DNA of 64,000 nucleotides from IMGVR_UViG_3300046536_000256:1-64000; one strand, 5' to 3'; positions 25,514 through 51,376 are shown, numbered from the stretch's first letter. Made by a program: numbers and translations. The notes: a model not told the origin generated them from the letters alone.

Positions 25514-26836
25514 TTAGCCCATGAGAGCGGCGATGGAAGCCGGCAGCGCAACCTGAGCGGAACCACCAGCTGGTGCTGGCAGACCGATAGGTGCGCTGTC
25601 AGTACCTTCCGACAGGTTGCTGGAGATTGCACCCTGAGCCAGACGACCCAGACCCGAACCCAGCGCACCAGCTGCCAGACCCAGAGTACCAGCAGCGGTG
25701 TACTTGCCGAACTGGTTGTCGATCACGCCTTCCAGCATTTCACCAGCGAAGAACGAACCGACGATACCGGCAACTGCACCGATACCACTGCCGACGCTCA
25801 GGCTGCCACGGTGACCAGTTTCCAGAGCAGCGCCCAGCAGAGCACTACCTGCGGCAACCCAACCAGCACGCACGCCGTCGTCACGTTCACCACGCAGGGA
25901 GAAACGCGAACGAGCTTCAGCCGACTGAATAGCCGGTTTGAAGGTCTTGGCGAATTCCTGGAACTTGGCGTTTGCTTCAGGCACCTGGCTGACGAAGGTG
26001 TGGAACTGTGCATCGTTGCTCAGACCTTCCGGTGCTGCTTTGGCGGTTGCCGAAGCTTGTGGTTGGAAGGCCAGGTTCTCGGACAGGAACACGTTGTACA
26101 GCTCGTCGCGTTGCGCTTCGGTTGCGTAACCAATAACCACCAGGTCAGCAACAAAGATTTCCAGAGCGGTTTTCGGTTTGGCTTCGTTGTTCATAACAGT
26201 CGACTCGTTGGTGGCGGTGGATGCGGCAGGCGCAGCGGTTTCAACAGCAGGAGTGTTAACAGCGGTCAAAGCGATCAGAGTAGTTTTCATGGTTGGTTGC
26301 TCCAGGGAAGTGTTAGAAGTGTTAGAAGTTTGTTCGGCGGTAGCGGCAGGTGCCACTTGTTCTTGTACAGCCACACCGGATACCGGCGCGGGTTCAAGCG
26401 TTGCATTTTGTTGCTGGCCATGATTCAGGATCCATTCTTCGGAACCTGGTTCACCGACCAGTTGATGCGTTTCAGAGTGCACAACGCTTTCTGGCGCTGG
26501 GGTCTGAATGTTGATTACCGATTCACCGTGCAGCTCGTCCACTGGGATCAGTGTACCTTCCAGGGCCGCAGTTGCAGGGGATGTTGCAGCAGCCAGCAGA
26601 GTTGGATCTGCTTTACGCACTTGGTTCATGCTGAAGCCAGTACCGAGTGCTTCGTTAACGCGTTTCAGGAAAGTCTGACGATGCTGCTTTTCCAGGAACG
26701 CTTCGTCGAACATCTTGGCCTTCAGTACAGCCTGGATGGTTTGTGCATCGCCGCCATTGCCTTTGATTGTTTTCAAAGCTTCGATGGTAGCTTCCAGAGC
26801 CAGTTCATAAACAGGGCGTTCAATTTGCGAATTCAT
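25514..26836 (-). CDS. glycine-zipper membrane protein with low-complexity linker
   Basis: Start reassigned to MNSQIERP (AAGGAG SD). A/T/P/E-rich middle, C-terminal GxxxG-rich hydrophobic helices. Confidence 0.75.
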   Translation of the reverse strand: MNSQIERPVYELALEATIEALKTIKGNGGDAQTIQAVLKAKMFDEAFLEKQHRQTFLKRVNEALGTGFSMNQVRKADPTLLAAATSPATAALEGTLIPVDELHGESVINIQTPAPESVVHSETHQLVGEPGSEEWILNHGQQQNATLEPAPVSGVAVQEQVAPAATAEQTSNTSNTSLEQPTMKTTLIALTAVNTPAVETAAPAASTATNESTVMNNEAKPKTALEIFVADLVVIGYATEAQRDELYNVFLSENLAFQPQASATAKAAPEGLSNDAQFHTFVSQVPEANAKFQEFAKTFKPAIQSAEARSRFSLRGERDDGVRAGWVAAGSALLGAALETGHRGSLSVGSGIGAVAGIVGSFFAGEMLEGVIDNQFGKYTAAGTLGLAAGALGSGLGRLAQGAISSNLSEGTDSAPIGLPAPAGGSAQVALPASIAALMG

Positions 26837-26909
26837 TGGGTGTTGCTCCTTGTCGGGAAAGTGTAATGTTCTGCGTAACACAAAGATATTTGTATTACTT
26901 ACTGTGATA

Positions 26910-26924
26910 GTTATATAGACCTGA
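26910..26924 (-). promoter_or_regulatory. variant promoter motif TCAGGTCTATATAAC
   Basis: Degenerate copy in an AT-rich gap upstream of the glycine-zipper gene. Confidence 0.5.
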
Positions 26925-26960
26925 AAAAGAATATAAGTTAAAAATAAACGCAATCAAACA

Positions 26961-26998
26961 TATACCCCTTATCCCGCATTAGCGGGATAAGGGGTATA
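26961..26998 (-). terminator. 17-bp perfect stem-loop followed by TATGTT
   Basis: TATACCCCTTATCCCGC-ATTA-GCGGGATAAGGGGTATA immediately after the stop at 27001. Confidence 0.75.
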
Positions 26999-27000
26999 AA

Positions 27001-27432
27001 TTACTTACCGAGGCTGTACGCTTCGTTGGTAAAGGTTAGTTTACGGCCCGCCCAATCGGTTAATACGGTTTGGCACGCCAGGATGTCATACTGGTTAAAG
27101 TCGTAGGTCAAACTCATGTGCGGAATGTAACCCGCATACGGAGTCTCGTAACCAGCGGCTTTAAGGCGGAGGTGTTCTTCTTGCAAGTCCTTACTGGTCA
27201 AACGAAAGATCAAACCGTCACCCAGAATCTCCAACGCCACGACATGCGCTTCGAAGATTCGTGTAGGGTCCAGAACAGCTAGGGGTTTATCGATATCCCG
27301 CTCATCGTAGATCAGCGTTGAGTGGAAGTCATGCTTGGGTGCAGGAGCGATGCCAGCAGCACTCAGAAGAGTAATCAGCTCTGCTTCGAAGTCACTGGTC
27401 AGTTCAACCGAGATGTAGCTGTAATCCATCAT
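27001..27432 (-). CDS. 2H phosphoesterase, T4 57B/Acb1-like
   Basis: Two HxT/S motifs, FHSTLIY and YIPHMSLTYD, ~60 aa apart in a 143-aa protein; start reassigned to MMDYSYI. Confidence 0.75.
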   Translation of the reverse strand: MMDYSYISVELTSDFEAELITLLSAAGIAPAPKHDFHSTLIYDERDIDKPLAVLDPTRIFEAHVVALEILGDGLIFRLTSKDLQEEHLRLKAAGYETPYAGYIPHMSLTYDFNQYDILACQTVLTDWAGRKLTFTNEAYSLGK

Positions 27433-27440
27433 CAGGCGCC

Positions 27441-28160
27441 TCAGGAAGGGAAGGGGGTGTCCAATACAATCCCTTGGTGGTTGTCGACGATGTCCAAACA
27501 ACGGAACACAGCAAAGACCCCCTTGTGTTCAGTCGACAGCCGGTTCGCTTCTTCCATCGCCAGCGCCTTGGTCTGATGACGATAAGGAACGTTGTGGATG
27601 TTGACCGCGCCGGTTTGGGTTACCTTACCGATAATGAAACGACCCAGCGTCTTGGCGTACTTCGGTTTGTAACTTGCAGTGCCAGCCAGCGTGAGTTTGT
27701 TGTGGTACATCTGGAAACCTTCCCAGCGTGCATTCACCCACTGCATGACGTACTTGTCGCGGGAATCACGGTCCAGTACCTTGGGATCGAACGAGCCTTC
27801 TTCAAACAGCAGGTTCTCGAACTCTTCCCGTAAGGTGCAGTTCTTGTTATCCGGACGAGCAGCCACCGGAGGCATGCCATGACCCTGTTGCAATTCGCGA
27901 GTAGTGCGGCGCGTTAGGGGAATGGCCACGACGTAAGGATCCGTGTCGTTAGCCGGGGTGTAGACCATTACTGGTGCATCTTCTTTGACATTTGGACCAA
28001 TGCGTTCGTGCAGGACTTCTACCGCTTCTAACAGAGCGGCTTCAACGTTAGGTTGCCCCAACTCTACGGTGCGCTTGTTTACCCATGCTTGATCAATTGC
28101 GCGCAGCGAGAGTGGTTCGGTGGACAAGAAATCCACCGGAGTCAGTTCTTGAACAGTCAT
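27441..28160 (-). CDS. hypothetical protein
   Basis: 239 aa; C-terminal PYRHQTKALAMEEANRLS...FAVF motif of a type common in phage proteins. Confidence 0.7.
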   Translation of the reverse strand: MTVQELTPVDFLSTEPLSLRAIDQAWVNKRTVELGQPNVEAALLEAVEVLHERIGPNVKEDAPVMVYTPANDTDPYVVAIPLTRRTTRELQQGHGMPPVAARPDNKNCTLREEFENLLFEEGSFDPKVLDRDSRDKYVMQWVNARWEGFQMYHNKLTLAGTASYKPKYAKTLGRFIIGKVTQTGAVNIHNVPYRHQTKALAMEEANRLSTEHKGVFAVFRCLDIVDNHQGIVLDTPFPS

Positions 28161-28180
28161 TGCTTATTCTTTCCTTGAGT

Positions 28181-28648
28181 TTATTCGTGGCTACCCGGTA
28201 CATCGAAGTTTGGTAGCCCTGGAAGGTCTCCGTCCAGAATCTCGGAGACCCAGCGACCGCCGGCCATTTCAATCGCACGCCAATCAGCAGTTCCGCCGAT
28301 TTGTTTGGCGTACTCGTTTAGCAAACGCGGGTGATAGTTGTGGTCGCCCATGAGACAATGGCCGAGGCGATCAGCGATTCTGGAAAGGTCATCGTGATCA
28401 GCACCTTCTACCCGACCATCCGGGTGCAGGACTTGGACGCCGTACCACTTGCAATAGTTTTCCATCGTCACAATGGGTTTGCCGAAAGTAGACGGCGACT
28501 GACACAGCAGCGGAATGCCGCGTTGACTTACGTAGACCTTTGTCTTCGGTTGCCCCGGAACTGTGACCCACTGGATGATGTGTGGGTCACTCTCTTTATT
28601 ACGCCCCGGAACTTCTGCGGGTGCTTCTGGTTGAATTTCGTTCGCCAT
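28181..28648 (-). CDS. hypothetical protein
   Basis: 155 aa, GGAGA SD. Confidence 0.65.
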   Translation of the reverse strand: MANEIQPEAPAEVPGRNKESDPHIIQWVTVPGQPKTKVYVSQRGIPLLCQSPSTFGKPIVTMENYCKWYGVQVLHPDGRVEGADHDDLSRIADRLGHCLMGDHNYHPRLLNEYAKQIGGTADWRAIEMAGGRWVSEILDGDLPGLPNFDVPGSHE

Positions 28649-28926
28649 CTTTGTTTCTCCCCTGAAGAAGGTTGTTTAGGTCCGAATATCTTGTCGTGGA
28701 ATTTCATTGAAGCCACCATACCGAACGCAGCCCCACACCCCGCACTTATCCCAATGGTCCACTCCCCCTTAACTACTAGGGTAATAGCGGCTACGTCAAA
28801 CGCCGCCATTAAGAACGATGTGAAAAATACAGAGCGGGTGTGGTTACCTATTACGTTCTTGTACTGGAACCCTTTTAGAAACACCGCACAAAAAGACGAT
28901 CCAACACTAAGAGCATATAACAGCAT
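28528..28926 (-). CDS. small multi-pass membrane protein
   Basis: Three hydrophobic helices with a GCGAAFG glycine motif; tail overlaps the next gene by ~120 nt. Confidence 0.65.
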   Translation of the reverse strand: MLLYALSVGSSFCAVFLKGFQYKNVIGNHTRSVFFTSFLMAAFDVAAITLVVKGEWTIGISAGCGAAFGMVASMKFHDKIFGPKQPSSGEKQRWRTKFNQKHPQKFRGVIKRVTHTSSSGSQFRGNRRQRST

Positions 28927-29414
28927 TAGCTTAATCCGCTGTATTCAGTGTCATGGGTGGTAGGTTTGGCGGCAGCGTCTTTAGCGATCTGGTCCGCCTC
29001 TTCGTTATCAGGGATACCGGAGTGAGCCTTAACCTTAATGAACTTAACCTTATTCACCCTGAGCAACTCGTTCAGGATGATCCACAGGTCTTTGTTCTTG
29101 ACCATCTCGCCGTTGCGGGTAAGCCAGTCATTACGGTACCAGTTCTTGACCCACTTAGTCGAACCGTCAATGGTGTACTGTGAGTCGGTATAGATGTTGA
29201 TCCGGGCGTTCGGACCAAACTCCTCCAGCGTGGCAATTACTGCCATGATTTCCATGCGGTTGTTGGTAGTTAAGTAATAACCCTTGGAGAGTGTGACCTT
29301 CTGGTCTCCGCATCTCACCACAGCCCCATATCCGCCAGGCCCCGGGTTGCCCAAGGCGCTACCGTCAGTATGCACCTCGTAAACAATCACCGGAGCCTTC
29401 TTAGCTTTTGCCAT
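28926..29414 (-). CDS. rnhA: ribonuclease HI
   Basis: TDGSALGNPGPGGYG, TTNNRME, YTDSQY, VKNKDLW, KVKAHSG, NEEAD. Confidence 0.97.
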   Translation of the reverse strand: MAKAKKAPVIVYEVHTDGSALGNPGPGGYGAVVRCGDQKVTLSKGYYLTTNNRMEIMAVIATLEEFGPNARINIYTDSQYTIDGSTKWVKNWYRNDWLTRNGEMVKNKDLWIILNELLRVNKVKFIKVKAHSGIPDNEEADQIAKDAAAKPTTHDTEYSGLS

Positions 29415-30353
29415 CTAACACACCGCGCTATGCCGTAAGTATTTCAAATGAAAGGCCTTCTCTATTATCTTCAATAGATCGACCCGAGAGTTAATGCAGT
29501 CCCGAATATACCGGAGTTGATCCAAGATTAATTCTTCGCCCCGTTCTTGCAGTATCCGGAACAGTTGGTCGTCAAAATTGGGATGACCGAATTCAATGTG
29601 AAAACGATTACCCCTGAGATCGGGCGCAACCGCCCAAGCATCTTTAGCCGTTTGAAAGGCATACAGGGTAGTCCGTGGCAGAGTGATCTCCAAGAAGAAC
29701 ATCCGGCTACGGATATACACTGTGGGTGCTGTTAACCGTACACTAGTCCAAAATACATCGGAAATGTATAACAGTCCTACACAGTTGACGTGGCTATTCG
29801 TTGCATTCACATGTGTAAGATCGATGTCGGCGTTAGTAAAGAATGTGCAGTGCTCCAGACTACAGTCTACGATACTGACAGTAGACTTGGTTGAAATCAC
29901 CGAACAGGATTCAATCCAACAGTTAGAAATCCAAGCATTTTTAGAGACGGCGGCATCTAAGAGCTCTACCTCGTCAAACGTTACCCCCGTGTAACTGTTT
30001 CGTTCTTTACCGTCACTGACAAGCACATCAGAGATGGTGTAGTTACACCCGATGCTGTAGATGTTGGCAACGGCGCAACGCCCGTGAAAGGTGTCGTTCT
30101 TACTCGTGCAGTTCTTGAGTACCACATCGCAGTACTCAAGGTCCTCAATATCCTCGTCCTCGTTCACCTGAAGTGACAGGTATTTGTTCGAGTCCACCTC
30201 CACGATGGATTCAGGACAGAGGCTGTATTTCAACATGTACTGCCCAATCGGGAAGTAGTAGCGGTCAACGCCCTCAATAGGTGCCGCGAGTTCCGGGAGG
30301 GGCATCGCGTTCAGCTTTACCCCGTCCAAATACAGACCCGGTTTTTGTGTCAT
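29415..30353 (-). CDS. beta-helix-like repeat protein, paralog 3 of 3
   Basis: Periodic I/V-x-N/D/S-C/S repeats; shared N- and C-terminal motifs with its neighbours. Confidence 0.75.
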   Translation of the reverse strand: MTQKPGLYLDGVKLNAMPLPELAAPIEGVDRYYFPIGQYMLKYSLCPESIVEVDSNKYLSLQVNEDEDIEDLEYCDVVLKNCTSKNDTFHGRCAVANIYSIGCNYTISDVLVSDGKERNSYTGVTFDEVELLDAAVSKNAWISNCWIESCSVISTKSTVSIVDCSLEHCTFFTNADIDLTHVNATNSHVNCVGLLYISDVFWTSVRLTAPTVYIRSRMFFLEITLPRTTLYAFQTAKDAWAVAPDLRGNRFHIEFGHPNFDDQLFRILQERGEELILDQLRYIRDCINSRVDLLKIIEKAFHLKYLRHSAVC

Positions 30354-31288
30354 ATTGGATCTCCTAACGTTCTTTCGAATTCAGCCCACAGGACCTGGAT
30401 GATTCTCCGGCGAGAACGAATGCAATCTACCACGTAATGATAGATGTCTTTCGGCAGAGCCAGTTCACAGTCAACCAATAACTCGGTCAACTTGGCCTCG
30501 AACTCTGGGTCATCCACCGGGACGTTAAACCCACCGCCTTGCCGGGTGATGGCAAACTCATCATTCCCCGTCTGATAACAGTACAGTGTCAGGTTAGGGA
30601 AATCCAAGCTGAAGAAGTACAAGCGGTTAGGGATGTGGCAGTCATCCACCTTCAGGTACATCTCGTTCAAACGGCTGTCGATTATCCGGATGAAATTCGC
30701 GGCATGTACACTGGCGTCGTTGAACTTACTCCCCTCCAGAACCAACGCTCCCTTAGAAGAGAACGACGAGTTCTTCATCGTGGACCCTTCGATACGTGCC
30801 TGACCCTCTGTGTGGACCGTGGAGTTGATGATTGACGAGTTGAGTACGAAGCTACCATCAGAGATCGTAGCGTTCTCCAAACGCGAGCTGATGACCGTCT
30901 GGTTGACTAACGGGTGCAGACGCGCGGTTTGCATCGACGAACGCGAGATATCCGAGTTCACGATGTTGCAAGCATTGGTCACCGTGTTGCTCAATACGCA
31001 GTTACCAGTAAAGGTATCGCGGTAACTGCTGCTGTTCGTGACGGTTACCCACGCGTGATTCTCGTCATCATTGTCCTCTTCGATTTCCAAGTCGAGGTAA
31101 GCAGCAGAGTCAATCTTGACCACCGAGTGTTCATCAAGAAAGAAGTGGAGTGTTAGGATCCCCACGGCTACTCGGTATTGATCGAAATCCCCAACACCGC
31201 CTTCATCGTCAACAGAGGGGTAAGTGTTTAGCCGGATAGGTTCCAGCTTGTGACCGTCAATGTATACGCCAGTTTCGTGTTCCATCAA
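30350..31288 (-). CDS. beta-helix-like repeat protein, paralog 2 of 3
   Basis: GVYIDGHKL, NSSSYRDTF, IPNRLYFFSLDFP, YVVDCIRSR. Confidence 0.75.
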   Translation of the reverse strand: MMEHETGVYIDGHKLEPIRLNTYPSVDDEGGVGDFDQYRVAVGILTLHFFLDEHSVVKIDSAAYLDLEIEEDNDDENHAWVTVTNSSSYRDTFTGNCVLSNTVTNACNIVNSDISRSSMQTARLHPLVNQTVISSRLENATISDGSFVLNSSIINSTVHTEGQARIEGSTMKNSSFSSKGALVLEGSKFNDASVHAANFIRIIDSRLNEMYLKVDDCHIPNRLYFFSLDFPNLTLYCYQTGNDEFAITRQGGGFNVPVDDPEFEAKLTELLVDCELALPKDIYHYVVDCIRSRRRIIQVLWAEFERTLGDPI

Positions 31289-31344: not shown

Positions 31345-32808
31345 TTAGACTGCGTAGATGTCGTCCCAAGGCCTTGTGCGGTCACCAACTTCGCGGACAA
31401 GCTGTCTAGCTTCATCCAACAGGCGAACGACTTTCAAACGAGACGTGATCGAGTCAGTCAGGTAACTCGCGATGCTGCGAGTCAGTAAGGTTGGTTGTGT
31501 GTGAAACCCTTCAGGGTCCATTGACAACTGCATAGCAATGAACTTCTGAATATCTTCGTCCGGAGTATCCAGACGCATGCGCTCCATGCTGTGTTGCTGA
31601 GTGCCCAGATCGAAATCCCGGCGAGTGGAGCGAACGAAGTACAACTTGTGTTGCGGGGTATCCAGCTCCAGGTAGGAGAACTTGTTGGGAACGTACACCG
31701 ACGGAGCGCTGATGTGCACACCATTGAAGCGGGTGTGTTTCACCAACAACTCACCCTCAGCGATTACACCCGATTTGTTCAGGTGGACATCTTTGACGGT
31801 AATACGGGTACCGCGAACGTTGGCGTCGAACAACTGGCTACCGGTAACCGTGACGTACCCGCTGCCGCTGACTTGAGTGTCGTGGATTTGTGAGTCGCGG
31901 TAAACACCGTGGGACACTGCCGAGTTAAACACCGAGGTACGCTTGAACTGACCCTCTTTAACGTTCATGCGTTCACGGATGTCTTTCGTCGGCACAGCTG
32001 GCTCTTCGCTCAGGTGGTTAAAGCCATACCCGTAACGATGGTCCACTTCCTTGGTACGCGCCAGTACAGAATTGTTCAGCACGTTAAAGGAAGACTCGGT
32101 GTTCACCAACAGTGATTCACCGATTGGCAGATCCTCGTTGCTGGACGAGTTGATCAAGACCAGTGTGCCATGAATGGCGAGGTTGGTTGGAGCGTGGCTG
32201 TTATGACGCGTTTCACCGCCACCCAGGGTAACTGTGGAGTTACCGTCCAGCAAGTAGTACGATTCAATCCCGTTGTTCTTCAACAGATACAGCGAGAAGA
32301 CTTTGTCGGCGTACAACTGGCTGACCTGGTGTGGCAAGTAGAACGCCTTCGGCAACAGGCTGTTACGGATGCGGTTGTAATCGACTTTCAAGCCGGTCGC
32401 AATCGGTTCCTGCAACACGCCTTCAAACATGAAGGTACCGGTGGCCTGAACCGATTGCAGCGCGTTGGCCACCGCTTCGGAGATCTTGGCTTCCGGGTCG
32501 AGGCCAGCCGCCTTCAGCACCTTTTCGGCGTTACGGATCTGGCGGTCGGTTGGCACTTCTTCGGCAACATCGGTGCCCGCAGGGGTTATGTGAGGCGCGG
32601 TAAAGCTCTTAGGATTATCCGAAGTCTCTTGAGCGATAGTCCCGATAGGTTCTTTGAAGGCCTTTTCCAGGTTCTTCTCGAACAGACTGTTTGCGGCTTC
32701 CTGAGTGAAACCTACTTCCTTTGCGGTGTCTAACGCCTTGAGCGCTTCGGCCACAGGCTTCAGGGTAAATTTATCCCCGTTGGCTGGTTTCTTTTCCACT
32801 TTACTCAT
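31345..32808 (-). CDS. beta-helix-like repeat protein with N-terminal extension, paralog 1 of 3
   Basis: Start reassigned to MSKVEKK (overlaps the ligase stop); VPNKFSYLELDTP, YLTDSITSR. Confidence 0.75.
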   Translation of the reverse strand: MSKVEKKPANGDKFTLKPVAEALKALDTAKEVGFTQEAANSLFEKNLEKAFKEPIGTIAQETSDNPKSFTAPHITPAGTDVAEEVPTDRQIRNAEKVLKAAGLDPEAKISEAVANALQSVQATGTFMFEGVLQEPIATGLKVDYNRIRNSLLPKAFYLPHQVSQLYADKVFSLYLLKNNGIESYYLLDGNSTVTLGGGETRHNSHAPTNLAIHGTLVLINSSSNEDLPIGESLLVNTESSFNVLNNSVLARTKEVDHRYGYGFNHLSEEPAVPTKDIRERMNVKEGQFKRTSVFNSAVSHGVYRDSQIHDTQVSGSGYVTVTGSQLFDANVRGTRITVKDVHLNKSGVIAEGELLVKHTRFNGVHISAPSVYVPNKFSYLELDTPQHKLYFVRSTRRDFDLGTQQHSMERMRLDTPDEDIQKFIAMQLSMDPEGFHTQPTLLTRSIASYLTDSITSRLKVVRLLDEARQLVREVGDRTRPWDDIYAV

Positions 32809-34768
32809 GAAGTGCTCCTGCTTTAATCTGTTGAATGAGTGCATCGATGCTCGAGGCAGCGGTTGCGTTAATCGTAGGGATATGCTGTTCAGCTGCTTTT
32901 AGTATCTTGCTCTGACCAGGCTTCTCCCCGATGAGGAGGTAATTGCAATCCTTGGTGAGTTTATCCACCAGTTCAATACCATGATCCCCGAAGTAGCTTT
33001 CCAGTTCTTCCCGGGCTTGACCGATGGTACCGGTGATGCAGACCTTCAGTTCCGTAATCGGACCCTCAGGCTCAACCAGAACATTAAGGTTCGCCAAGAT
33101 ACCTTCTGCGTTCTCCACGAACTCTTCACTTTCAAAGCTCAGGGCAATCGGGATAGACAAACCAGCAGAGAACCCTGGGATCTTGATCAGTTCGTCAGCA
33201 TTACCCAACCACTGAAGCAAGTTCACATTCCCCGGCCATGCGGCGGCCAGCTTCTTGGCACGCGTCAGATCAACACCAGGCAGACCCAGCGCCTTAATGA
33301 CACGGGACAACGGTTGACCTTTGCGCACTTCCTGAATGCGGTTGTAGATCTTCTCACCTACCACACGTTCATTTAGAAGAAGGATATCCACAGGCAACTT
33401 GATATAACCCTGTTCGATCAACTCGGCAACAGTCACAGGACCCAAGTCGTCGATATCCAGCGTGCGTTTGTGCGCAAGGTTCACGCAACGCAGCACAAGC
33501 TGTGCAGGACAGTCTGTGACGTTGGTACAGATGAGATCGGCACTCTGCTTGGTGATGCGCTTCTCCAGCGGCATGCAGCAGCTAGGGCACTCCTCAGGCG
33601 CTTTGAAGAGTTCACCTTCGCCATGTTCAATCACACGGTTCAGACGAGGGATCACATCCCCGTTACGAGTCACACCGATTACCGAACCTTTACGCAGCTC
33701 CACCGCTAGGAACTGTTTATAGTTGTCCAGATACGTGCGAGCACAGATCACCCCACCAATGCGGGTAGGAGCGTAAAGCCCCACCGGCACCACACGACCA
33801 GTACGAGTGGTATTCCACACGATATCGGTCAGAGTAGTAGCAACCTCCACATCTGGGTACTTGTACGCCAGCGCCCAGTTAGGGTACTTGTTGGTGACCC
33901 CCAGCTTTTCTTGCAATTCAAAGTCGTCGACCTTGATCACAATACCATCGGCTGGCCAGTCCTTGCTGTTGATGTTCTCCCGGATCGCTTCCAGCGACGC
34001 AACAGGCGCGCAATGGAAACCCAGCAGGGTCAGGTGGTTACGCAGTTCGCTGTACTTCTTCTTGCCCAAGGTACTGCTGCAATAGTAAGCGCCGAACCGC
34101 AGGATCCCTTTAACCGCGTGGTTCTGGTTCTCCGGCAAAGCACGAATCCAACCGCTGACTGCGTTACGAGGGGTAGCGGCTTGTTTAAGCGCTGTCTCGT
34201 TATACAGTTCAAAGTCGTGACAGGTGATGTGCCCTTCACCGCGGATGTTGACAGTGCCCGGGACAGGAACGTTGTTCAGGTCAGTCAGCATCCTTGGGAT
34301 GTTCAGACCGAACAAAGGCAAAGCATGGGTAACGTCTTCGCCCACCAGACCGGACCCACGAGTCACCATGGATATCAGTGGACCGTCGACATACGTCAGT
34401 TCCAACGCAATACCGTCCAGCTTAAGTTCATAGAAGAACAGAGTGTCTTCCGGGAACCGTGCGAGGAACTTGTCAACCGCGTCTTGGTTCAATCCCTTCT
34501 TCAAGCTCAGCATTGGGCTATCGAAGGTAACGGGTTTCAGGCCTTCATTAGTAGGCTCGTGGATTGGCACGGGTTTGCGAGCGGTTTCGAACAGTTCGGC
34601 AATTTCCGGGTGTTCCTCGGCCAACTCTTCGAAGCGCTCGACCATCTGGTCGTACAGATAATCTGGGATCTCAGACGTGTCCTTATTGAAATAAAGATCC
34701 GCGTGGTACATGATGTCACGATTTAAATCGTTCATCTCTGTGAAGATCGTTTTATGTTTTGCTTTCAT
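32801..34768 (-). CDS. ligA: NAD-dependent DNA ligase
   Basis: ELKLDG (KxDG), TRGSG..GEDVT, DGIVIK, OB domain, Cys4 zinc finger, HhH motifs, BRCT; start reassigned to MKAKHK. Confidence 0.97.
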   Translation of the reverse strand: MKAKHKTIFTEMNDLNRDIMYHADLYFNKDTSEIPDYLYDQMVERFEELAEEHPEIAELFETARKPVPIHEPTNEGLKPVTFDSPMLSLKKGLNQDAVDKFLARFPEDTLFFYELKLDGIALELTYVDGPLISMVTRGSGLVGEDVTHALPLFGLNIPRMLTDLNNVPVPGTVNIRGEGHITCHDFELYNETALKQAATPRNAVSGWIRALPENQNHAVKGILRFGAYYCSSTLGKKKYSELRNHLTLLGFHCAPVASLEAIRENINSKDWPADGIVIKVDDFELQEKLGVTNKYPNWALAYKYPDVEVATTLTDIVWNTTRTGRVVPVGLYAPTRIGGVICARTYLDNYKQFLAVELRKGSVIGVTRNGDVIPRLNRVIEHGEGELFKAPEECPSCCMPLEKRITKQSADLICTNVTDCPAQLVLRCVNLAHKRTLDIDDLGPVTVAELIEQGYIKLPVDILLLNERVVGEKIYNRIQEVRKGQPLSRVIKALGLPGVDLTRAKKLAAAWPGNVNLLQWLGNADELIKIPGFSAGLSIPIALSFESEEFVENAEGILANLNVLVEPEGPITELKVCITGTIGQAREELESYFGDHGIELVDKLTKDCNYLLIGEKPGQSKILKAAEQHIPTINATAASSIDALIQQIKAGALHE

Positions 34769-34839
34769 TGAAAAACCTTCAAGCATAAATAAGGTTAAGG
34801 TAGGAGCCTGAGGATACCTCCCCAAGCTCCATGGTATTC

Positions 34840-40576: not shown

Positions 40577-43465
40577 TTAGAACACGTCGCGATGCGTAAA
40601 GAACTGGTTAGGTCCATCCGCACCATCATCAACAAAGCAAGGGATCGCTGAACCGCGGCGAGTAGCACTAACAACGTGGTTACTCATCACCATGTAATCC
40701 TTAACCTGCTGAAGTACGCCGTTTACTGCAATGCCGAACATCACTTCATTGTTGGCGACCTCCCGACGGACATCAGAACCCAACACTGCAATAACGTCAC
40801 CGTAACGAACCAAGTAACAGTACGTGGTTCCCGCAGGGTTAACCTTGAGTGCAAATTCCTCACCCAAGACCATCGCTTTACCGCCAATCACCAACCGGCC
40901 GCCCGCAGGTACGCGAACCCACCCAGCTTCGTTGACGTTGAATGGATCAACCTTGGTCACACCACCCACTTCCAACATGGTGTTTGTGAAAGCCCCATTG
41001 GTTGCGTCGTATTGGAACACCCCCTTGTTAGGGATTAGAATCGGAGGAAGGAGTTCGTCCACCAAGTCAAACTGCTGGGTCCCTGGGTAGAGACGAACGA
41101 CGTTGGTCTTGACCGGTGTGAACGCCGGGAAGGTAGACCCCCCAAACCCAGCACAGGTAAAGCTGATGTCGCCGTAGTTGTTACCGAATGGACGGGTCAA
41201 CACAAAGCCGGTGGTGTTTGCGTCGATGTTGACGATTTGCAAGTCGGAGTAATCCATCCGCGTACCGTCACCCGAACCCGACTTCCGATTCCCTACAGCC
41301 ACAGGCCCGCTAGCCGCGGTTATCGGCTTCAACGCTACCCCGTTGGTCTGTTTAAAGTCCAACGTAAAGATGTTGTTGATCACCGAGTATCTTGCTGCTG
41401 CTGCTTCAGCGTAACTCACCCCGTCAGAGACCACCACGAGCGCCTTGGTGCCCGTTACCGCAAAGACCTGGATCTCTGGTACCCGGAGGGTTGGGTCAAC
41501 CCCTGGGTTGAGCACAGCAGCCCTGTCGGTTAGATCGCGCATTACCGCTTGCATACTGAGCATGCTTGCAACAGCCATCTCGACATCAGCACCGACTGTC
41601 AACACTTGGTTTGCGAACGTGACACTGGCTTTACCCACATGCCGGTTGGCCGACGTAAACGCCAACGCATTGTACCCAACACCCGCCGAGGCTTTGTTAA
41701 CCGCAACCGCCATCGACACCGGTATCAGTCCAATGTCATCCATTGGGGTTCTTACTTCCGGCAGCCTTACGCCAAACACACCATCACCCGTTTGAGTGCT
41801 AACGATGCTAGCGTTGTTCCACGTCAGCAACGACCAACTGAACAAACCAGTACCGGGATTCAACCCGTAAACCAGATGTTGAGTAACCGCCGCGTTATGG
41901 GTCACCGGGATAATACGCTCGGGCAATGGACCGAATGGTGCATGACGACTTGGGGCAAAGACTTCGGTTATTGCATCCGACGGGTCTGCCACAGGACGTT
42001 GAGCCAGCATCCAGTCGATCACACTGGTGTAATCCGTGCGGTAACGCTTAACCCGCATCGCCAGCTTAGAACTACGGGCTTTAACCATGAGCCCCGAGTT
42101 CAACAACACACCAGGCGACTGACTAATGTTGTTAAGATCGAATGGGTTGTTCACAGTGAAGAACGAAGACCCGGCCGTAGGCAACAAGTTCGCATCCAAG
42201 GTGTCCTTGACGCGACTCCCGATGGTTTTGAACAACGCTGTCCCACCGGCCACCAACGTACCCGGAATGATTGACTCGGTAAACGAGAGCACCAGCTTAC
42301 TGACCAATGCGCCTTGAGTGACAACCACCCCCACGCTGACGTTCAAGTACATCTCGAAGTCAGTGGAGTTCCACACCAACACAGTAACCGGATCAGGTCG
42401 AGCCGGGTCCCCGGCAATGGTAGCGCCAGCCGGCAAGGTGAGGAAGTCGGCAAGGTTATACGTGTGGAAGCCGTTAGCCGGACCCGGGGCGGGTGAGGCA
42501 CTTCCCATCTTGTCAAATGACGCCAGGTAAGAGCTGTTCACCAGTTCCGTCATGGATGGAGCCGTTGTCACGGCATTGACCGAGAAGAACCGATGATCAA
42601 TCCGCAACACACCCGCTGCCAACGCTACCGAGATCCCCAAGCCTTTATAGACCGCGTTGGCGAAGTTGTTGTAGAGGAGGTAGTTACGGTTAGCCGCTGG
42701 AAGAGGCAGTGTGGAAGCGAAGTTGTAAATCTTCTTATCGCCCAAGGGACGGAAGAACCCCACCTTACCGTCGGTTGTATCCCCGCCGGTCATGTTCCAG
42801 TTCGCCCCGGTGTAGCGCGCGGCTAGGTTAGTGACCTCACTGAGACGAGCACGGGACAAGCCTTTCAACGGCAACCCCACAAACAAACTCTGTTTACTGT
42901 AACGCCCTTCATCCGACCGTGGGGAATAGATCAGACGATCGCCATCAATCAGAATCGGCACCCGGCCATTGGACAGCAGATAACGGCTCGGTTCAGGTGT
43001 TGCTGGGAGAACCGTTTCGTAATCGTCCGGGTAGTAGTACGACGCGAACTGAAACACCCCGTTCTGCTGGTAAAGAGTGGGGTCGAAGTCAGCGGTGTTC
43101 GCATCCAAGGAGGCCTTGGCCCCAGCAGGCGTTACAAAGGCGTTTACGCTGGCGTAACTGATGGACTCAGCCAATGTAGCGGTTCGGAAGTTATCCTTCT
43201 TGTCGAGCCCCACAGTGTCTTTGGTCTCACCGTGCGCCGCACCCCGTATTGCCAAGTGTGCATCAATCGGGGCAATACTGCTGTTGATCCACTGAGTAAC
43301 GTGGGTATCGAGCCCATCCAGCTGATCTTTAATGCTCTTATTGAATTCGCGAACCCGGTCTTCAGCTTTAACCGTGAAGTCATTGAGCTTGTGGATCACC
43401 GCCCCAAAGGTAGGTTCCGGATTCTCAATGACAGGAGGTTCCGCTATAGGCCTGACAATAATCAT
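40577..43465 (-). CDS. large tail/baseplate-associated structural protein (paralog)
   Basis: 962 aa, beta-rich; HGETKDTVGLDKKDNFRTATLAE repeat and C-terminal TRRGSAIP shared with its neighbours. Confidence 0.7.
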   Translation of the reverse strand: MIIVRPIAEPPVIENPEPTFGAVIHKLNDFTVKAEDRVREFNKSIKDQLDGLDTHVTQWINSSIAPIDAHLAIRGAAHGETKDTVGLDKKDNFRTATLAESISYASVNAFVTPAGAKASLDANTADFDPTLYQQNGVFQFASYYYPDDYETVLPATPEPSRYLLSNGRVPILIDGDRLIYSPRSDEGRYSKQSLFVGLPLKGLSRARLSEVTNLAARYTGANWNMTGGDTTDGKVGFFRPLGDKKIYNFASTLPLPAANRNYLLYNNFANAVYKGLGISVALAAGVLRIDHRFFSVNAVTTAPSMTELVNSSYLASFDKMGSASPAPGPANGFHTYNLADFLTLPAGATIAGDPARPDPVTVLVWNSTDFEMYLNVSVGVVVTQGALVSKLVLSFTESIIPGTLVAGGTALFKTIGSRVKDTLDANLLPTAGSSFFTVNNPFDLNNISQSPGVLLNSGLMVKARSSKLAMRVKRYRTDYTSVIDWMLAQRPVADPSDAITEVFAPSRHAPFGPLPERIIPVTHNAAVTQHLVYGLNPGTGLFSWSLLTWNNASIVSTQTGDGVFGVRLPEVRTPMDDIGLIPVSMAVAVNKASAGVGYNALAFTSANRHVGKASVTFANQVLTVGADVEMAVASMLSMQAVMRDLTDRAAVLNPGVDPTLRVPEIQVFAVTGTKALVVVSDGVSYAEAAAARYSVINNIFTLDFKQTNGVALKPITAASGPVAVGNRKSGSGDGTRMDYSDLQIVNIDANTTGFVLTRPFGNNYGDISFTCAGFGGSTFPAFTPVKTNVVRLYPGTQQFDLVDELLPPILIPNKGVFQYDATNGAFTNTMLEVGGVTKVDPFNVNEAGWVRVPAGGRLVIGGKAMVLGEEFALKVNPAGTTYCYLVRYGDVIAVLGSDVRREVANNEVMFGIAVNGVLQQVKDYMVMSNHVVSATRRGSAIPCFVDDGADGPNQFFTHRDVF

Positions 43466-43527
43466 AGCTCTACTCCGTGTTGAATGTGGAAAGTCAAAGG
43501 GGAATTACTTCCCCATGACCGTGGTCG

Positions 43528-46500
43528 TTACGGCAACAGCTCAGCGTTATGCAGGAAGGCAAACGTACCTTCGTCCTGAGGGAACCCGGTACTGACTGGG
43601 ATAATGCCACCCTCACGCGTGTAACTCAGCTGATACTGTCCGACCATCAACGGCTGGTGCCGAGTAATCGAGAGGATCTGCTGGCTGTTGGTTACCACTG
43701 TTGCCGCTTTGAGCATGTTGCCGGATTTACGCATCTTGACTTCGGTCACAAGATAACGAGGTTTGTCGTCCTGTACCGTTGCGTAAATGTAGAACGTTTT
43801 GTTTTGTGGCGCTGGATCAATGTCACGCAAATCGATCGTCCCACCCTCCATGGCGTACGCTGTGCCGTTTACCAACATCCGGATGTTATCTTGCAGGAAG
43901 AGAGTCCAACCTGTTTCCGGATAAGCCGAGGCCACCAAGTAATAGTCGAGGCTATTATCCGGGTTGGTCTTCTTGATCAACGCACCCGCCCCGCCTGTGA
44001 GCATGTACGGCTGTGGGTTACCCGCCGAGATCGAGGTGCTGTCAGGTGTGTTGCCAGCAAGGGTAACGTCCGCCATCCCGATCTTAGGAAGCATGGTGAC
44101 AATGTCCCCTTGCGTCCAACTGGATGAACCGCCGTAAACACCGGTGACCTTGTTAGTTACTAGGTCAATGTCGAAAAGACACAGTTGTTTGGTGTTAATG
44201 GTCTGTGTGGTGACAGTCGAAAACGGACCCATCACGTACACTTTCAGCTTGCCATTGTCCCGGTACGCCGTGAGCAACGCTTTCTGTTTCAACGCGGTGG
44301 CGAGTAGCAGGTTAGCGTCGGCCATCTTCACGTTAACGCAGGTGCGTACATGAGGAGGGGCATCCAACACCGTGATGTCTTTAATCCAGAACACGCCCGG
44401 ATGATCAGCGTTGGGGGTTTCGACAACCGGGGTAAACAGCACCACTTGGGTACGGGTTTGCGAGAGGGTCGCGTCGAAGAAGTAGATCAGCGCGATACCA
44501 ATGTTAAGCCCGTTGAACATCCCTCCCGCTTCACTGCCCAGAACGTTCAAGCTGAAGCCCCAGTACTTAGTAGACTGGAACACAGCCGGGATCATCGCTT
44601 TAAGCTTGTCGATGATGTTCTGGCGAATGCCGTAGAACGAATCCGCGGCATACGTCGCTTTCTTCAATCCCGGGTCCAACGTTCGAGTAACCGTCCGTGG
44701 GAAAGAGATCAACACGTTGTTACCAGCGGGTGCTTTGAACAACGTATTACGCGGGAACGTTTGGTTAGCCGAAGAGTAAGACGCCCAACCGCAGGCACTG
44801 AAACTCGTGCTCCCACACTCCACACCCCCAGCCGCCAACTCAGCCGCAGAACCAGTCATACCGATGGTGAGGTCGTTATGTCCTAGGTTGGTCTCGTACA
44901 CCGCCCCTGTTAATGGGCGCGAGAAAATGTCCCCTATCGAGAGGTTGTTGACCCCCGGACGGACTTGATACCCACCCGTGACTAACCGCGTGTAAATTTT
45001 GCGGGTACCCGAGCTCTGTTCCACTGCCCCAAAGATCTCGCTGTCCGCGGTGTAGGTAACCGATCCTGGGTAGGTCCCGTTAAGAATCGGAGACTTCAGC
45101 ACGGGCTTCAAGATACGACGGAAGCTCAACTGAATCGCTTGAAGATCCAAACGACCACTTAACAGACTGGCATCCGATGTCTTGTTCTTGTAACGACTGA
45201 CCTCGGCAACCGACGGGAAGATGTTGCCATCCTGAATTGTCGAGGTGACGACGTCGCCGTTATCCAAAATCACCGTAGAGGCATTACTGGACTGGAAGGT
45301 GGCGTTGTAAAAATTGGTAAGGTACAGGTCCATGTACCCTGACCGTTCCGCTGGGGTGGAGTCCGTGAAGCCAACACTCAGCGCGGGTAATTTAGCGATT
45401 TGGGTCATCACCCCCGTAACACAGTTGAGCTCCCACCCGATGTCGGTCATCAATGTAATGTTGATGTTAACACCCGGCGCTGTGTAAATAGCGGCAAACC
45501 CCGGCATGATGTGGATGTAGTTGACGTTCGGCACACCCGGCTTCGGACACGAGACCACCATCGTCCGACCACTTTTAGACAGCGTAGCGATTGGCTGACG
45601 GAACGACCAAGGGCCGTACTTGATGATGGTGTTGTTGCCGTCCTTTGTGGTTGCGTTGGGTTGAACGTAACTGGCGTTGGTGAATGGGGTTCCATCCCAA
45701 TCCGTGTACGTTACCTTCAGCAGTTGCCAAGCCACAGCAAGACCGCTTTGAATATCCGACACCTTAACCCGGAAGAACGCATAGTTGTCAGCGTAAGCCG
45801 TCCCATAGTTCTGCACCAATACCAGATAGTCGCCCATGTGATGGATGGTGGCTCGGTTGTTGTTCACCCACGGGGCGCCAGCGAACAGTGCGTTAACAGC
45901 GGTCATGTCAACCCGGACATACCGATGCGCACTTGGATCAAAGGTGCCGTTGGTCAAGCAGACGAACCAGTCAGGGGTAGCAGGGTTGCCCACCATCATC
46001 GCCTTACCGTTACTGCCGGCAATAATCGCGGTGGGGTTAATCCCCAAAGCTACCAATGAAGCCGGAGCATACTTGTACCCGGTGTAAATGATCTTCCCCG
46101 CTGGCTGGTCATAGTTCTCTACGTATGAATAGTAGAGCCCTTGCTGACGACCGTCGTAGTGGTTGGTGAGCATCATCAACATCCCACTGTTTTCCATACA
46201 GAAACCAGAGGTGTCGTAGAGCGCGCCCAAACCTTCGAAGGACCCATCGATGTTCGGCGGAATGTAGCTGTCGCCCGCAAAACGGCTGAGCGGCATGATT
46301 CCCTGAAACATTGCTGCGTCAGTGTCAGCCTTATACGACTTGGCTAACTGACCCACACCCATCGGGGTACTGAAGACGTCACTACGAATCCCCGCCAGTT
46401 CTTCTGCCAGTGTTGCGGTGGCGAAGTTGTCGTGGTTCCCCATGGTGATGTCAAACTTGGTGGTCTGGTGGGGAACGTTGTAATTCTCGTCGTGGGCTTT

Positions 46501-47115: not shown

Positions 47116-47181
47116 TGTGTTAGCCTTTTAAAAGAGAGGGGAGGAGGGGTTCACCCTGCCTCCTCTCCAACACGTTGTTGT

Positions 47182-50799: not shown

Positions 50800-50800
50800 A

Positions 50801-50832
50801 CAACTGATCTATGCGGTGGCATAGATCAGTTG
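50801..50832. terminator. 14-bp stem-loop
   Basis: CAACTGATCTATGC-GGTG-GCATAGATCAGTTG after the Tfa stop. Confidence 0.7.
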
Positions 50833-50841
50833 CGGGGCTGG

Positions 50842-51369
50842 TTATGGAGAGGTTGGCCAGTCAATGGTGGTTGGGTAACCGGCTTGTTGGTCGACCTTGC
50901 TCAACGCCAACTTGTAAGCCGCGTAAGCTTTAAAGGTCTTCGCGTCCGCATCGCTCAACAGTCCGGCAATGAAAGCATCCGCCATTCCGATCGTAGCTTG
51001 GTTGGCAACCCCCATCAACTGGTCACGTTGGGCCTGAGCGGCCAAAGACGCATCAAGAAGCCACACGGTACCATTCCAGGCGTAATGAACCCCAGGACAA
51101 GGAACCCGTGTATATTCACTAGGCAACTCCTCGAGGGTACGCCACTCCTTCGGAGCACCAGTGGTTACACTGTAGACCGTCCCACGTTGATCGATGACTT
51201 GGGTTGGAACCCCGTCAACGTTTACCCACACCTTACCGGCGTCTGCGGCCACCAACAGATCTTCCACCTCGATAGCGTTGCTCGGCAATGGGAAACCCAA
51301 CCCCGGAACTTCGCAAATGGTAATCGGTCCGTACAAAATACCCAGTTCATCGAATTCGTAAATATTCAT
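50842..51369 (-). CDS. tail fibre assembly chaperone (Tfa-like)
   Basis: DQRGTVYS..TG, HYAWNGTVW, helical C-terminus ending QQAGYPTTIDWPTSP; directly follows the fibre gene. Confidence 0.88.
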   Translation of the reverse strand: MNIYEFDELGILYGPITICEVPGLGFPLPSNAIEVEDLLVAADAGKVWVNVDGVPTQVIDQRGTVYSVTTGAPKEWRTLEELPSEYTRVPCPGVHYAWNGTVWLLDASLAAQAQRDQLMGVANQATIGMADAFIAGLLSDADAKTFKAYAAYKLALSKVDQQAGYPTTIDWPTSP

Positions 51370-51376
51370 AAATACC

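What the first reader, a model, noticed from the sequence alone, without database searches (positions are those of the whole stretch)
27001..27432. Acb1-like 2H phosphoesterase: candidate anti-CBASS enzyme
Seen: two HxT/S motifs in a 143-aa protein, ending PHMSLTYD. Established: T4 57B/Acb1 has this architecture and degrades CBASS cyclic oligonucleotides; other 2H enzymes open 2',3'-cyclic phosphates in RNA. Inference: counter-defence against signalling immunity, which a nucleus shell would not block.
Basis: partly seen in the sequence, partly recalled or inferred. Interest (0 to 1): 0.6.

Follow-up and report, generated by a model that had tools for sequence, protein, structure and literature searches.

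The report
Acb1-family phosphodiesterase in a jumbo phage
A small gene in a nucleus-forming jumbo phage belongs to the known Acb1 family, whose members destroy the cyclic-nucleotide alarm signals of bacterial CBASS immunity, but it comes from a divergent, untested branch that lacks the usual C-terminal lid.

Summary
Window 27001-27432 (minus strand) encodes a 143-aa protein with two HxT/S motifs, H37-S-T39 and H105-M-S107. The motif pair alone is weak evidence, since 41 of 348 similar-sized ORFs in this genome carry two Hx[ST]. The family match is strong: Pfam Acb1 (PF23474) at 51 bits against a cut-off of 27, E 1e-13, versus 13.5 bits for the LigT-type family. The AlphaFold model (pLDDT 91.6) sits closest to solved phage Acb1 structures: BCSR5 Z 14.2, FBB1 Z 13.1, LigT Z 9.5.

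The genome is a complete 233-kb phage related to EL and RisingSun.

The gene is under purifying selection (dN/dS 0.12). It sits at a fixed position downstream of RNase H in all eight relatives examined. It ends an operon with a strong terminator.

Caveat: this clade keeps the catalytic tetrad and two of the four base-stacking aromatics. It lacks W74 and the whole C-terminal lid (W147) of T4 and FBB1 Acb1, and has its own invariant W127-x-G-R130. Its substrate range is therefore open.

The EL homologue is already auto-named Acb1. I found no biochemical test of this clade. Verdict: a new member of a known kind, of moderate interest.

The parts
27001..27432 (-). Coding sequence of the 143-aa Acb1-family 2H phosphodiesterase (P0001), stop codon included
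   Evidence: Translation. Pfam PF23474 E 1.2e-13. AF2 model pLDDT 91.6. dN/dS 0.12.
27316..27324 (-). First catalytic motif, H37-S38-T39. It corresponds to T4 Acb1 H44-x-T46.
   Evidence: H37 and T39 are invariant in 52/52 homologues. hhalign maps them to T4 H44/T46.
27112..27120 (-). Second catalytic motif, H105-M106-S107. It corresponds to T4 Acb1 H113-x-T115.
   Evidence: H105 is conserved in 52/52 and S107 in 51/52. hhalign mapping.
27043..27054 (-). Clade-specific invariant W127-x-G129-R130, just before the last beta-strand. It has no counterpart in T4 Acb1 and may replace the missing lid (inference).
   Evidence: W in 51/52, G in 52/52, R in 47/52. The hhalign alignment puts a gap in T4 here.
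27439..27442 (-). Shine-Dalgarno-like GAGG, 6 nt upstream of the ATG. It overlaps the stop codon of the upstream ORF, which suggests translational coupling.
   Evidence: Read directly from the sequence.
26961..26998 (-). Intrinsic-terminator-like hairpin (17-bp stem, 9 GC pairs, 4-nt loop, T-rich tail) starting 3 nt after the stop codon. It closes the transcription unit.
27441..28160 (-). Upstream, tightly coupled ORF of 239 aa with unknown function. It is conserved in 5 of 8 related loci.
   Evidence: No Pfam family, no Atlas hit, AF2 pLDDT only 54.6.
28926..29414 (-). RNase H gene, the conserved upstream anchor of the locus in all relatives
   Evidence: phrog_531 E 2.5e-50. Synteny.
32801..34825 (-). 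NAD-dependent DNA ligase, first gene of the closely packed minus-strand gene string that ends with the Acb1-like gene
   Evidence: phrog_3869 E 8e-154. ORF spacing.

Best explanation
The gene encodes a metal-independent 2H phosphodiesterase of the Acb1 family. After infection it is probably made in the host cytoplasm (inferred). There its two HxT/S motifs (H37/T39 and H105/S107) would cleave a 3'-5' bond of the cyclic di- or trinucleotide second messengers produced by CBASS cyclases, through a 2',3'-cyclic phosphate intermediate. cA3 from type III CRISPR with NucC could be a target too. Effector proteins would then not be activated and abortive infection would be averted. This matters for a nucleus-forming phage, because the protein shell shields its DNA from nucleases but cannot stop a diffusible signal from killing the host cell.

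Shown here: family membership, the fold, the conserved catalytic tetrad, purifying selection, the fixed genomic position and the nuclear-shell context.

Inferred: the substrate, the cytoplasmic location, the timing of expression and the anti-defence effect.
For: - Family match: Pfam Acb1 at 51.4 bits against a cut-off of 27, E 1.2e-13. All 52 clade members match Acb1.
- Solved structures by sequence: PDB searches find only Acb1 entries, 7T26/7T27 and 9Q2G/9Q2Y.
- Link to T4: hhalign against the T4 clade gives probability 95%, with H44/T46/H113/T115 aligned to H37/T39/H105/S107, Y12 to Y6 and F107 to Y99. Y6 is Y or F in 52/52 homologues and Y99 is F or Y in 52/52. tblastn reaches KVP40 gp57B.
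- Structure: the AF2 model has pLDDT 91.6. Its nearest solved structures are phage Acb1s, with Foldseek E 5e-7 to 2e-6 and VIA Z 14.2 and 13.1, against LigT at E 1e-2 and Z 9.5.
- A real, constrained gene: dN/dS 0.12 and GC content equal to the genome's. It has a ribosome-binding site and a terminator.
- No RNA-repair partner: no Rnl2-type or RtcB RNA ligase was found in the complete genome.
- Context: the genome encodes a chimallin homologue. CBASS III-C restricts a nucleus-forming phiKZ-like phage by more than 1e5-fold (PMC10889362), and phiKZ itself has no Acb1 match.
- Mechanism of characterised Acb1s: PMC9117128.
Against: - Identity to characterised Acb1s is only about 18-22%.
- The Pfam match stops at profile position 121 of 144.
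- The strand that carries the stacking residue W74 in T4 has no aromatic residue in this clade.
- The protein ends where the T4/FBB1 lid (residues 145-152, with W147) begins.
- E141, which reads adenine N6 in T4 Acb1, has no clear equivalent.
- Arabidopsis ADP-ribose-1'',2''-cyclic-phosphate phosphodiesterase scores almost as high (Z 12.4) as FBB1 Acb1 (Z 13.1).
- The gene is a fixed, syntenic component next to RNase H and DNA ligase in all relatives. It does not sit in a recognisable anti-defence island.
- I found no biochemical test of any member of this clade.
Confidence: 0.65

Rival explanations
1. It is an Acb1-fold enzyme with a different or wider substrate range than T4 Acb1. Without the C-terminal lid, and with a clade-specific W127-x-G-R130 loop, the pocket might accept larger rings (cA4 or cA6 of type III CRISPR), 2'-5' linkages, or another nucleotide signal. 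Its main target would then be a signalling defence other than classical CBASS.
For: The lid (residues 145-152, W147) and W74 are absent, while W127, G129 and R130 are nearly invariant. In T4/FBB1 Acb1 the closed pocket is what excludes rings of more than three bases (PMC9117128). Nucleus-forming phages are known to be vulnerable to type III CRISPR signalling (Mayo-Munoz et al. 2022, seen only as a reference; the details rest on my own knowledge). The best structural match, BCSR5 phosphodiesterase from another jumbo phage, is deposited in open-lid and closed-lid states, so lid geometry varies within the family.
Against: This is pure inference from absent residues. The C-terminal alignment has low confidence. 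Model coordinates could not be inspected, so pocket size was not measured. Y6 and Y99, two of the four stacking residues, are conserved, which argues for a similar binding mode.
Confidence: 0.17
2. It is a housekeeping 2',3'-cyclic phosphodiesterase or RNA-end healing enzyme, LigT-like or CPDase-like. It would act on RNA or nucleotide 2',3'-cyclic phosphates during phage nucleic-acid metabolism, not on immune signals.
For: PHROG 755 carries the label 'RNA ligase'. Seventeen of 52 clade members also give weak matches to PF13563. The structure is similar to Arabidopsis CPDase (Z 12.4) and to LigT (Z 9.5). The gene is co-oriented and tightly packed with DNA ligase and RNase H, and it is a fixed syntenic gene in all eight relatives.
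Against: PF13563 scores 13.5 bits, below its cut-off of 27, while Acb1 scores 51.4 bits. LigT is 4.7 Z units below the best Acb1. No Rnl2-type or RtcB ligase exists in the complete genome to seal healed ends; the PF09511 search was uninformative. The PHROG label is a legacy name of the 2H superfamily and is not evidence of ligase activity.
Confidence: 0.15
3. It is a chance ORF, or a decayed and inactive remnant.
For: The bare Hx[ST] pair is common: 41 of 348 ORFs carry it.
Against: Profile E-value 1e-13. dN/dS 0.12. Fifty-two homologues have an invariant catalytic tetrad. The fold is predicted with confidence. The ORF has a ribosome-binding site and a terminator.
Confidence: 0.01

Closest known systems
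Pseudomonas phage EL gp126 (YP_418159.1) and Erwinia phage RisingSun gp120 / Joad homologue
   Same: Same clade: 45% and 44% identity over the full length. They share the same length, the same position downstream of RNase H and the same Pfam Acb1 match. One source (UniRef) already names the EL protein 'Anti-CBASS protein Acb1'.
   Different: The records annotate these proteins as 'RNA ligase', 'hypothetical' or 'putative structural protein'. None has been tested. The RisingSun 'structural' label is not backed by that paper's mass-spectrometry table. In EL a DHH phosphoesterase lies between RNase H and the gene; this genome has no DHH gene.
Phosphodiesterase (Acb1) of Burkholderia jumbo phage BCSR5, PDB 9Q2G / 9Q2Y
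   Same: Best structural match: VIA Z 14.2 with 142 of 143 residues aligned, and Foldseek TM 0.74-0.76. A sequence profile of the clade also hits it at E 1.5e-4. It too comes from a jumbo phage of about 227 kb (PMC12388082).
   Different: Only 17-19% identity. It is 165 aa against 143 aa. I found no paper describing it, so its substrates, and which element forms its lid, are unknown to me.
T4 gp57B Acb1 and Erwinia phage FBB1 Acb1 (PDB 7T26/7T27; Hobbs et al. 2022, PMC9117128)
   Same: Same Pfam family and 2H fold. The HxT/HxT tetrad aligns with H37/T39/H105/S107. The stacking residues Y12 and F107 are kept as Y6 and Y99. All are small stand-alone phage proteins.
   Different: About 18-22% identity. 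No aromatic residue at the W74 position, no C-terminal lid (145-152, W147) and no clear E141 equivalent. There is an extra helix (114-123) followed by the W127-x-G-R130 segment after the second motif. The T4 gene lies next to ipI in an anti-defence neighbourhood; this one ends a DNA ligase/RNase H gene string.
E. coli LigT, Arabidopsis CPDase and other cellular 2H phosphoesterases
   Same: Same superfamily fold and HxT/S catalytic chemistry. Z is 9.5 for LigT and 12.4 for Arabidopsis CPDase.
   Different: The sequence profile match is below threshold (PF13563, 13.5 bits). These proteins are larger (170-185 aa) and act on RNA ends or ADP-ribose cyclic phosphate.
Penguinpox cGAMP phosphodiesterase (PDB 9BKQ/9CIW), the eukaryotic-virus Acb1-like enzyme
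   Same: A viral 2H enzyme that destroys an immune cyclic dinucleotide. Z 10.2.
   Different: 8-9% identity, about 200 aa, and it acts on 2'3'-cGAMP of animal cGAS-STING.

Membership tests
Acb1 (Pfam PF23474; T4 gp57B type) | Sequence-profile match above the curated threshold | tested here: met
   51.4 bits against a cut-off of 27, E 1.2e-13, covering residues 6-121 and profile positions 4-121 of 144. The six-frame genome search gives 50.7 bits. All 52 clade members match.
Acb1 (Pfam PF23474; T4 gp57B type) | Compact 2H fold with an HxT/HxT catalytic tetrad (T4 H44, T46, H113, T115) | tested here: met
   H37-S-T39 and H105-M-S107. They are invariant or nearly so and aligned to the T4 tetrad. 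The AF2 model has pLDDT 91.6 with the expected beta/alpha order.
Acb1 (Pfam PF23474; T4 gp57B type) | Structure nearer to solved Acb1 than to other 2H enzymes | tested here: met
   VIA Z: BCSR5 14.2, FBB1 13.1 and 12.4, Arabidopsis CPDase 12.4, LigT 9.5. Foldseek E: 5e-7 to 2e-6 for Acb1, 1e-4 for CPDase, 1e-2 for LigT. The margin over CPDase is small: FBB1 and CPDase are tied within 1 Z.
Acb1 (Pfam PF23474; T4 gp57B type) | Base-stacking aromatics Y12 and F107 | tested here: met
   Y12 maps to Y6 (Y 45, F 7 of 52). F107 maps to Y99 (F 31, Y 21 of 52).
Acb1 (Pfam PF23474; T4 gp57B type) | Base-stacking W74 on the central hairpin | tested here: not met
   The aligned strand (residues 64-70) has no aromatic residue in the window protein. 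Across the clade, position 67 is L/M/I/V in 51 of 52 and position 68 is E/D in 45 of 52.
Acb1 (Pfam PF23474; T4 gp57B type) | C-terminal lid (T4/FBB1 residues 145-152, with W147) that closes over the ligand | tested here: not met
   The protein ends 2-4 residues after its last strand. hhalign leaves T4 145-152 unmatched. The model's residues 3-143 span the whole 137-residue ordered apo FBB1 chain, in which the lid is not modelled. Clade tails are short and basic, with no tryptophan except in two members. The C-terminal alignment has low confidence.
Acb1 (Pfam PF23474; T4 gp57B type) | E141 contact to adenine N6, which sets the requirement for one adenosine | tested here: inconclusive
   In the global alignment E141 falls on S140 (G in 46 of 52). 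E137 is nearby but is E in only 25 of 52.
Acb1 (Pfam PF23474; T4 gp57B type) | [quoted passage not shown] | not testable with these tools
   This needs biochemistry and phage challenge assays. I found no published test for this clade.
LigT / 2'-5' RNA ligase type 2H enzymes (PF13563) | Sequence-profile match above the curated threshold | tested here: not met
   13.5 bits against a cut-off of 27, E 0.075.
LigT / 2'-5' RNA ligase type 2H enzymes (PF13563) | An RNA-repair context, meaning a partner RNA ligase in the genome | tested here: not met
   No PF09414 or RtcB match in the complete 233-kb genome, with positive controls ringing. The PF09511 search was uninformative because its controls were silent.
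   G000 134894-136909 (minus strand, 671 aa) matches phrog_4795 'nuclear shell protein' at E 3.7e-133. Direct searches with phiKZ gp054 were blank, so it is a distant homologue. The window also holds a PHIKZ128-like virion protein and an EL-type GroEL-like chaperonin. PhuZ tubulin and the split RNA polymerases were not tested.

The most novel reading that the evidence does not exclude
The EL/RisingSun-type clade may be a lid-less Acb1 variant. An internal W127-x-G-R130 loop would replace the C-terminal lid and open the pocket. The enzyme would then also destroy signals that T4 Acb1 cannot, such as cA4 or cA6 of type III CRISPR or non-canonical linkages. That would give nucleus-forming phages a single fixed enzyme against the signalling defences that bypass their shell.
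Probability: 0.15. Interest if true: 0.7.

Novelty: new member of a known kind. Interest (0 to 1): 0.35.

Why it matters
Nucleus-forming jumbo phages evade DNA-targeting defences. They remain exposed to abortive-infection systems that work through diffusible nucleotide signals: CBASS III-C restricts a phiKZ-like phage by more than 1e5-fold (PMC10889362).

An Acb1-type enzyme sits at a fixed position in the EL/RisingSun lineage, and phiKZ itself has no match. This gives a simple prediction: EL-type phages, or phiKZ supplied with this gene, should resist CBASS systems whose signals contain adenosine.

The clade's missing lid also makes it a natural experiment on how Acb1 chooses its substrates. 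In itself, though, the finding is a correct family assignment that automatic pipelines (Pfam, UniRef, AntiDefenseFinder-type tools) already make for relatives.

Tried and rejected
- NCBIfam has no model for this protein or for T4 Acb1.
- Supplements of Hobbs et al. 2022 do not mention EL, RisingSun, or Vibrio or Pseudomonas phages, so I cannot tell whether this clade was in their tree or test set.
- The 'putative structural protein' label of RisingSun gp120 suggested a virion-packaged enzyme. gp120 is not in that paper's mass-spectrometry table, so I dropped the idea.
- phiKZ gp054 did not find the shell protein, either through the genome search or through phmmer. Its PDB sequence search was also blank. 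Only the PHROG profile identified it.
- The upstream 239-aa partner ORF stays unknown: no Pfam family, one weak PHROG of unknown function, a blank Atlas search, and an AF2 model with pLDDT 54.6 that is too poor to search with.
- The C-terminal 36 residues alone find nothing in the PDB, so the tail could not be aligned to BCSR5 Acb1.
- The Acb2 (PF13876) and Rnl1 (PF09511) searches were uninformative because their controls were silent.
- A second ORF with a spaced HxT/S pair (G000 194244-194969) matches no family and is taken as chance.
- I found no paper on the BCSR5 structure.
- Also not used: sequencing-run search and read laying, because this is a metagenomic virus record and no expression claim is made, and complex prediction, because no binding claim is made.
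- The search for homologous proteins only sees proteins of 0.55-1.75 times the query length, so fusions and fragments of this domain were not surveyed.

Full report
**Observation.** The minus strand of window 27001-27432 encodes a 143-aa protein, P0001. It carries H37-S-T39 (27316-27324) and H105-M-S107 within PHMSLTYD (27112-27120). A GAGG lies 6 nt upstream of the first ATG and overlaps the stop codon of the preceding ORF. A 17-bp-stem hairpin with a T-rich tail starts 3 nt after the stop codon (26998-26961).

The motif pair alone is weak evidence. In this genome, 41 of 348 six-frame ORFs of 100-250 aa have at least two Hx[ST]. Only two have the motifs followed by an aliphatic residue and spaced 50-100 residues apart. 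The other ORF matches no family.

**What the protein is.**
- Pfam places it in Acb1 (PF23474) at 51.4 bits, cut-off 27, E 1.2e-13. The LigT-type family PF13563 scores 13.5 bits, below its cut-off.
- PHROG 755 matches at E 3.6e-23. Its label, 'RNA ligase', is the legacy name of the 2H superfamily.
- Sequence searches of the PDB find only Acb1 entries: FBB1 7T26/7T27 and, with a clade profile, BCSR5 9Q2G/9Q2Y.
- Word-indexed searches returned 52 homologues of 141-164 aa. All carry PF23474. Many sit on contigs of 210-243 kb, though others are known only from short contigs.
- One source already names the EL protein 'Anti-CBASS protein Acb1'.
- With this 52-sequence alignment, AlphaFold2 gives a confident model: pLDDT 91.6, pTM 0.85.
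- Foldseek ranks the BCSR5 phosphodiesterase and FBB1 Acb1 first (E 5e-7 to 2e-6), then Arabidopsis CPDase (1e-4) and LigT (1e-2).
- VIA-align gives Z 14.2 for BCSR5, 13.1 and 12.4 for FBB1, 12.4 for CPDase, 10.2 for penguinpox cGAMP PDE and 9.5 for LigT.

The margin over the plant CPDase is small, so the family assignment rests mainly on the sequence profile.

**Link to the founding member.** T4 gene 57B matches the same Pfam model at 202 bits, and its sequence was read from the record. A profile-profile alignment of the clade against 31 T4-type sequences gives 95% probability. A relaxed tblastn from P0001 reaches KVP40 gp57B directly.

The residues that Hobbs et al. define (PMC9117128) map as follows:
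- The tetrad H44/T46/H113/T115 maps to H37/T39/H105/S107, which are invariant or nearly so.
- Y12 maps to Y6, which is Y or F in 52/52.
- F107 maps to Y99, which is F or Y in 52/52.
- The strand that carries W74 has no aromatic residue.
- E141 has no clear equivalent.
- The lid (145-152, with W147) has no counterpart, because the protein simply ends.

Two further observations fit this mapping. The Pfam match stops at profile position 121 of 144. The model's residues 3-143 span the whole ordered apo FBB1 chain, in which the lid is not modelled.

In place of the lid region the clade has a helix (114-123) followed by a nearly invariant W127-x-G129-R130 and a conserved aromatic at position 139. 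Whether these line the pocket is inference, since model coordinates could not be inspected.

**Genome and context.** The window is part of a complete 233,283-bp virus record with direct terminal repeats. It holds a single Acb1 match. No isolate shows extended nucleotide identity.
- The closest isolates by protein are Pseudomonas phage EL (45%) and Erwinia phages RisingSun and Joad (44%), followed by pTD1-like Vibrio phages.
- The window also holds an EL-type GroEL-like chaperonin, an NAD-dependent DNA ligase, an SbcC-like protein and phiKZ-type virion proteins.
- Outside the window, G000 134894-136909 encodes a 671-aa protein that matches the PHROG 'nuclear shell protein' at E 3.7e-133.

**Locus organisation.** The gene is the last in a tightly packed minus-strand string, in this order: DNA ligase, a 499-aa ORF, two paralogous 312-aa ORFs, RNase H, a holin-like ORF, a 155-aa ORF, a 239-aa ORF, then Acb1 and the terminator.

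All eight related loci examined keep the same order: RNase H, then a variable segment of about 0.5-3.5 kb, then Acb1, then a homologue of the 479-aa ORF. These loci include EL and RisingSun.

The gene is under purifying selection, with dN/dS 0.12 against an 89%-identical homologue, and its GC content equals the genome's. It therefore behaves as a vertically inherited, fixed gene of this lineage. phiKZ itself has no match.

**Mechanism.** The best-supported reading is an Acb1-type, metal-independent phosphodiesterase that linearises 3'-5' cyclic di- or trinucleotide immune signals in the cytoplasm. This is plausible biology for such a phage. CBASS type III-C gives more than 1e5-fold protection against a nucleus-forming phiKZ-like phage (PMC10889362), so the shell does not protect against signalling immunity. 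I put this reading at 0.65.

Two rivals remain open.
- The missing lid and W74 could mean a different or broader substrate range (0.17). The attractive possibility is type III CRISPR cyclic oligoadenylates, to which nucleus-forming phages are known to be vulnerable. That work was seen only as a reference.
- A housekeeping cyclic-phosphodiesterase or RNA-end role (0.15) is suggested by the fixed position beside RNase H and DNA ligase and by the CPDase similarity. It is weakened by the sub-threshold LigT-family score and by the absence of any Rnl2-type or RtcB ligase in the genome.

**Novelty.** The family, its mechanism and its counter-defence role are known (PMC9117128). Automatic resources already label relatives as Acb1. 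Surveys report acb1 hits in jumbo phages (PMC13573597; PMC11780129). A jumbo-phage Acb1-like phosphodiesterase structure (BCSR5) is already in the PDB.

I found no experimental test of the EL/RisingSun clade, and no discussion of Acb1 in the context of the phage nucleus. This is a new member of a known kind, and its clade-level structural differences are worth a substrate panel.

Noticed in passing
window 27441-28926; L002 2074-4991; L003 2512-3750: The segment between the conserved RNase H and the Acb1-like gene varies among relatives. This genome has a holin-like ORF, a 155-aa ORF and a 239-aa ORF. EL has a DHH phosphoesterase. RisingSun has seven small genes, including a dihydrofolate reductase. 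It may be an accessory-gene hotspot.
   Followed up: partly
L003 2512-3750 (Pseudomonas phage EL gp125): In EL a DHH phosphoesterase sits directly upstream of the Acb1 homologue. A nanoRNase-type enzyme could finish off the linear products of Acb1. This genome has no DHH match, so the pairing is not general.
   Followed up: partly
window 27441-28160 (-): A 239-aa ORF is translationally coupled to the Acb1-like gene and conserved in 5 of 8 relatives. It has no Pfam family and no Atlas hit, and the AF2 model has pLDDT 54.6. Its function is unknown.
   Followed up: yes
window 28181-28648 and 28528-28926 (-): Two ORFs overlap by about 120 nt: phrog_19982 (155 aa) and a holin-like phrog_7045 (132 aa). 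Both are conserved at 95% identity or more in L004. The PHROG match of the 155-aa ORF starts at residue 36, so its true start is probably internal.
   Followed up: no
window 29415-30353 and 30350-31288 (-): Two adjacent 312-aa ORFs with no family match hit the same single region in several relatives. They look like a tandem duplication present in this genome and in L004.
   Followed up: no
window 3731-5434 (-): A GroEL-like chaperonin (phrog_5725, E 9e-128), a hallmark shared with phage EL.
   Followed up: no
window 40577-53233 (-): Four large neighbouring ORFs of 962, 1195, 1205 and 618 aa share an N-terminal phrog_2163 'virion structural protein' module. Two of them are full-length paralogues in phrog_3573. 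They look like a family of tail or fibre-like proteins.
   Followed up: no
G000 134894-136909 (-), outside the window (L017): The nuclear shell protein homologue is recognised only by the PHROG profile (E 3.7e-133). It gives no hit to phiKZ gp054 or to any PDB chimallin by single-sequence search, so it is very divergent from the solved chimallins.
   Followed up: yes
P0045 (homologue, 164 aa): One clade member carries a C-terminal extension of about 20 residues that is rich in Cys and His, with a zinc-knuckle-like pattern. Several others end in short Lys-rich tails.
   Followed up: no
L002 5001-5435 (RisingSun gp120) and Eneladusvirus homologues: Several GenBank records call the homologue a 'putative structural protein'. 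The RisingSun mass-spectrometry table does not list gp120, so the label looks like annotation carry-over.
   Followed up: yes
window 25514-26953 (-): The downstream neighbour (at most 479 aa) has an Ala/Gly-rich C-terminal part that looks membrane-like, and only one weak PHROG match. It is the conserved downstream anchor of the locus. A sigma-70-like promoter hit lies at 26957-26930, just after the Acb1 terminator.
   Followed up: no
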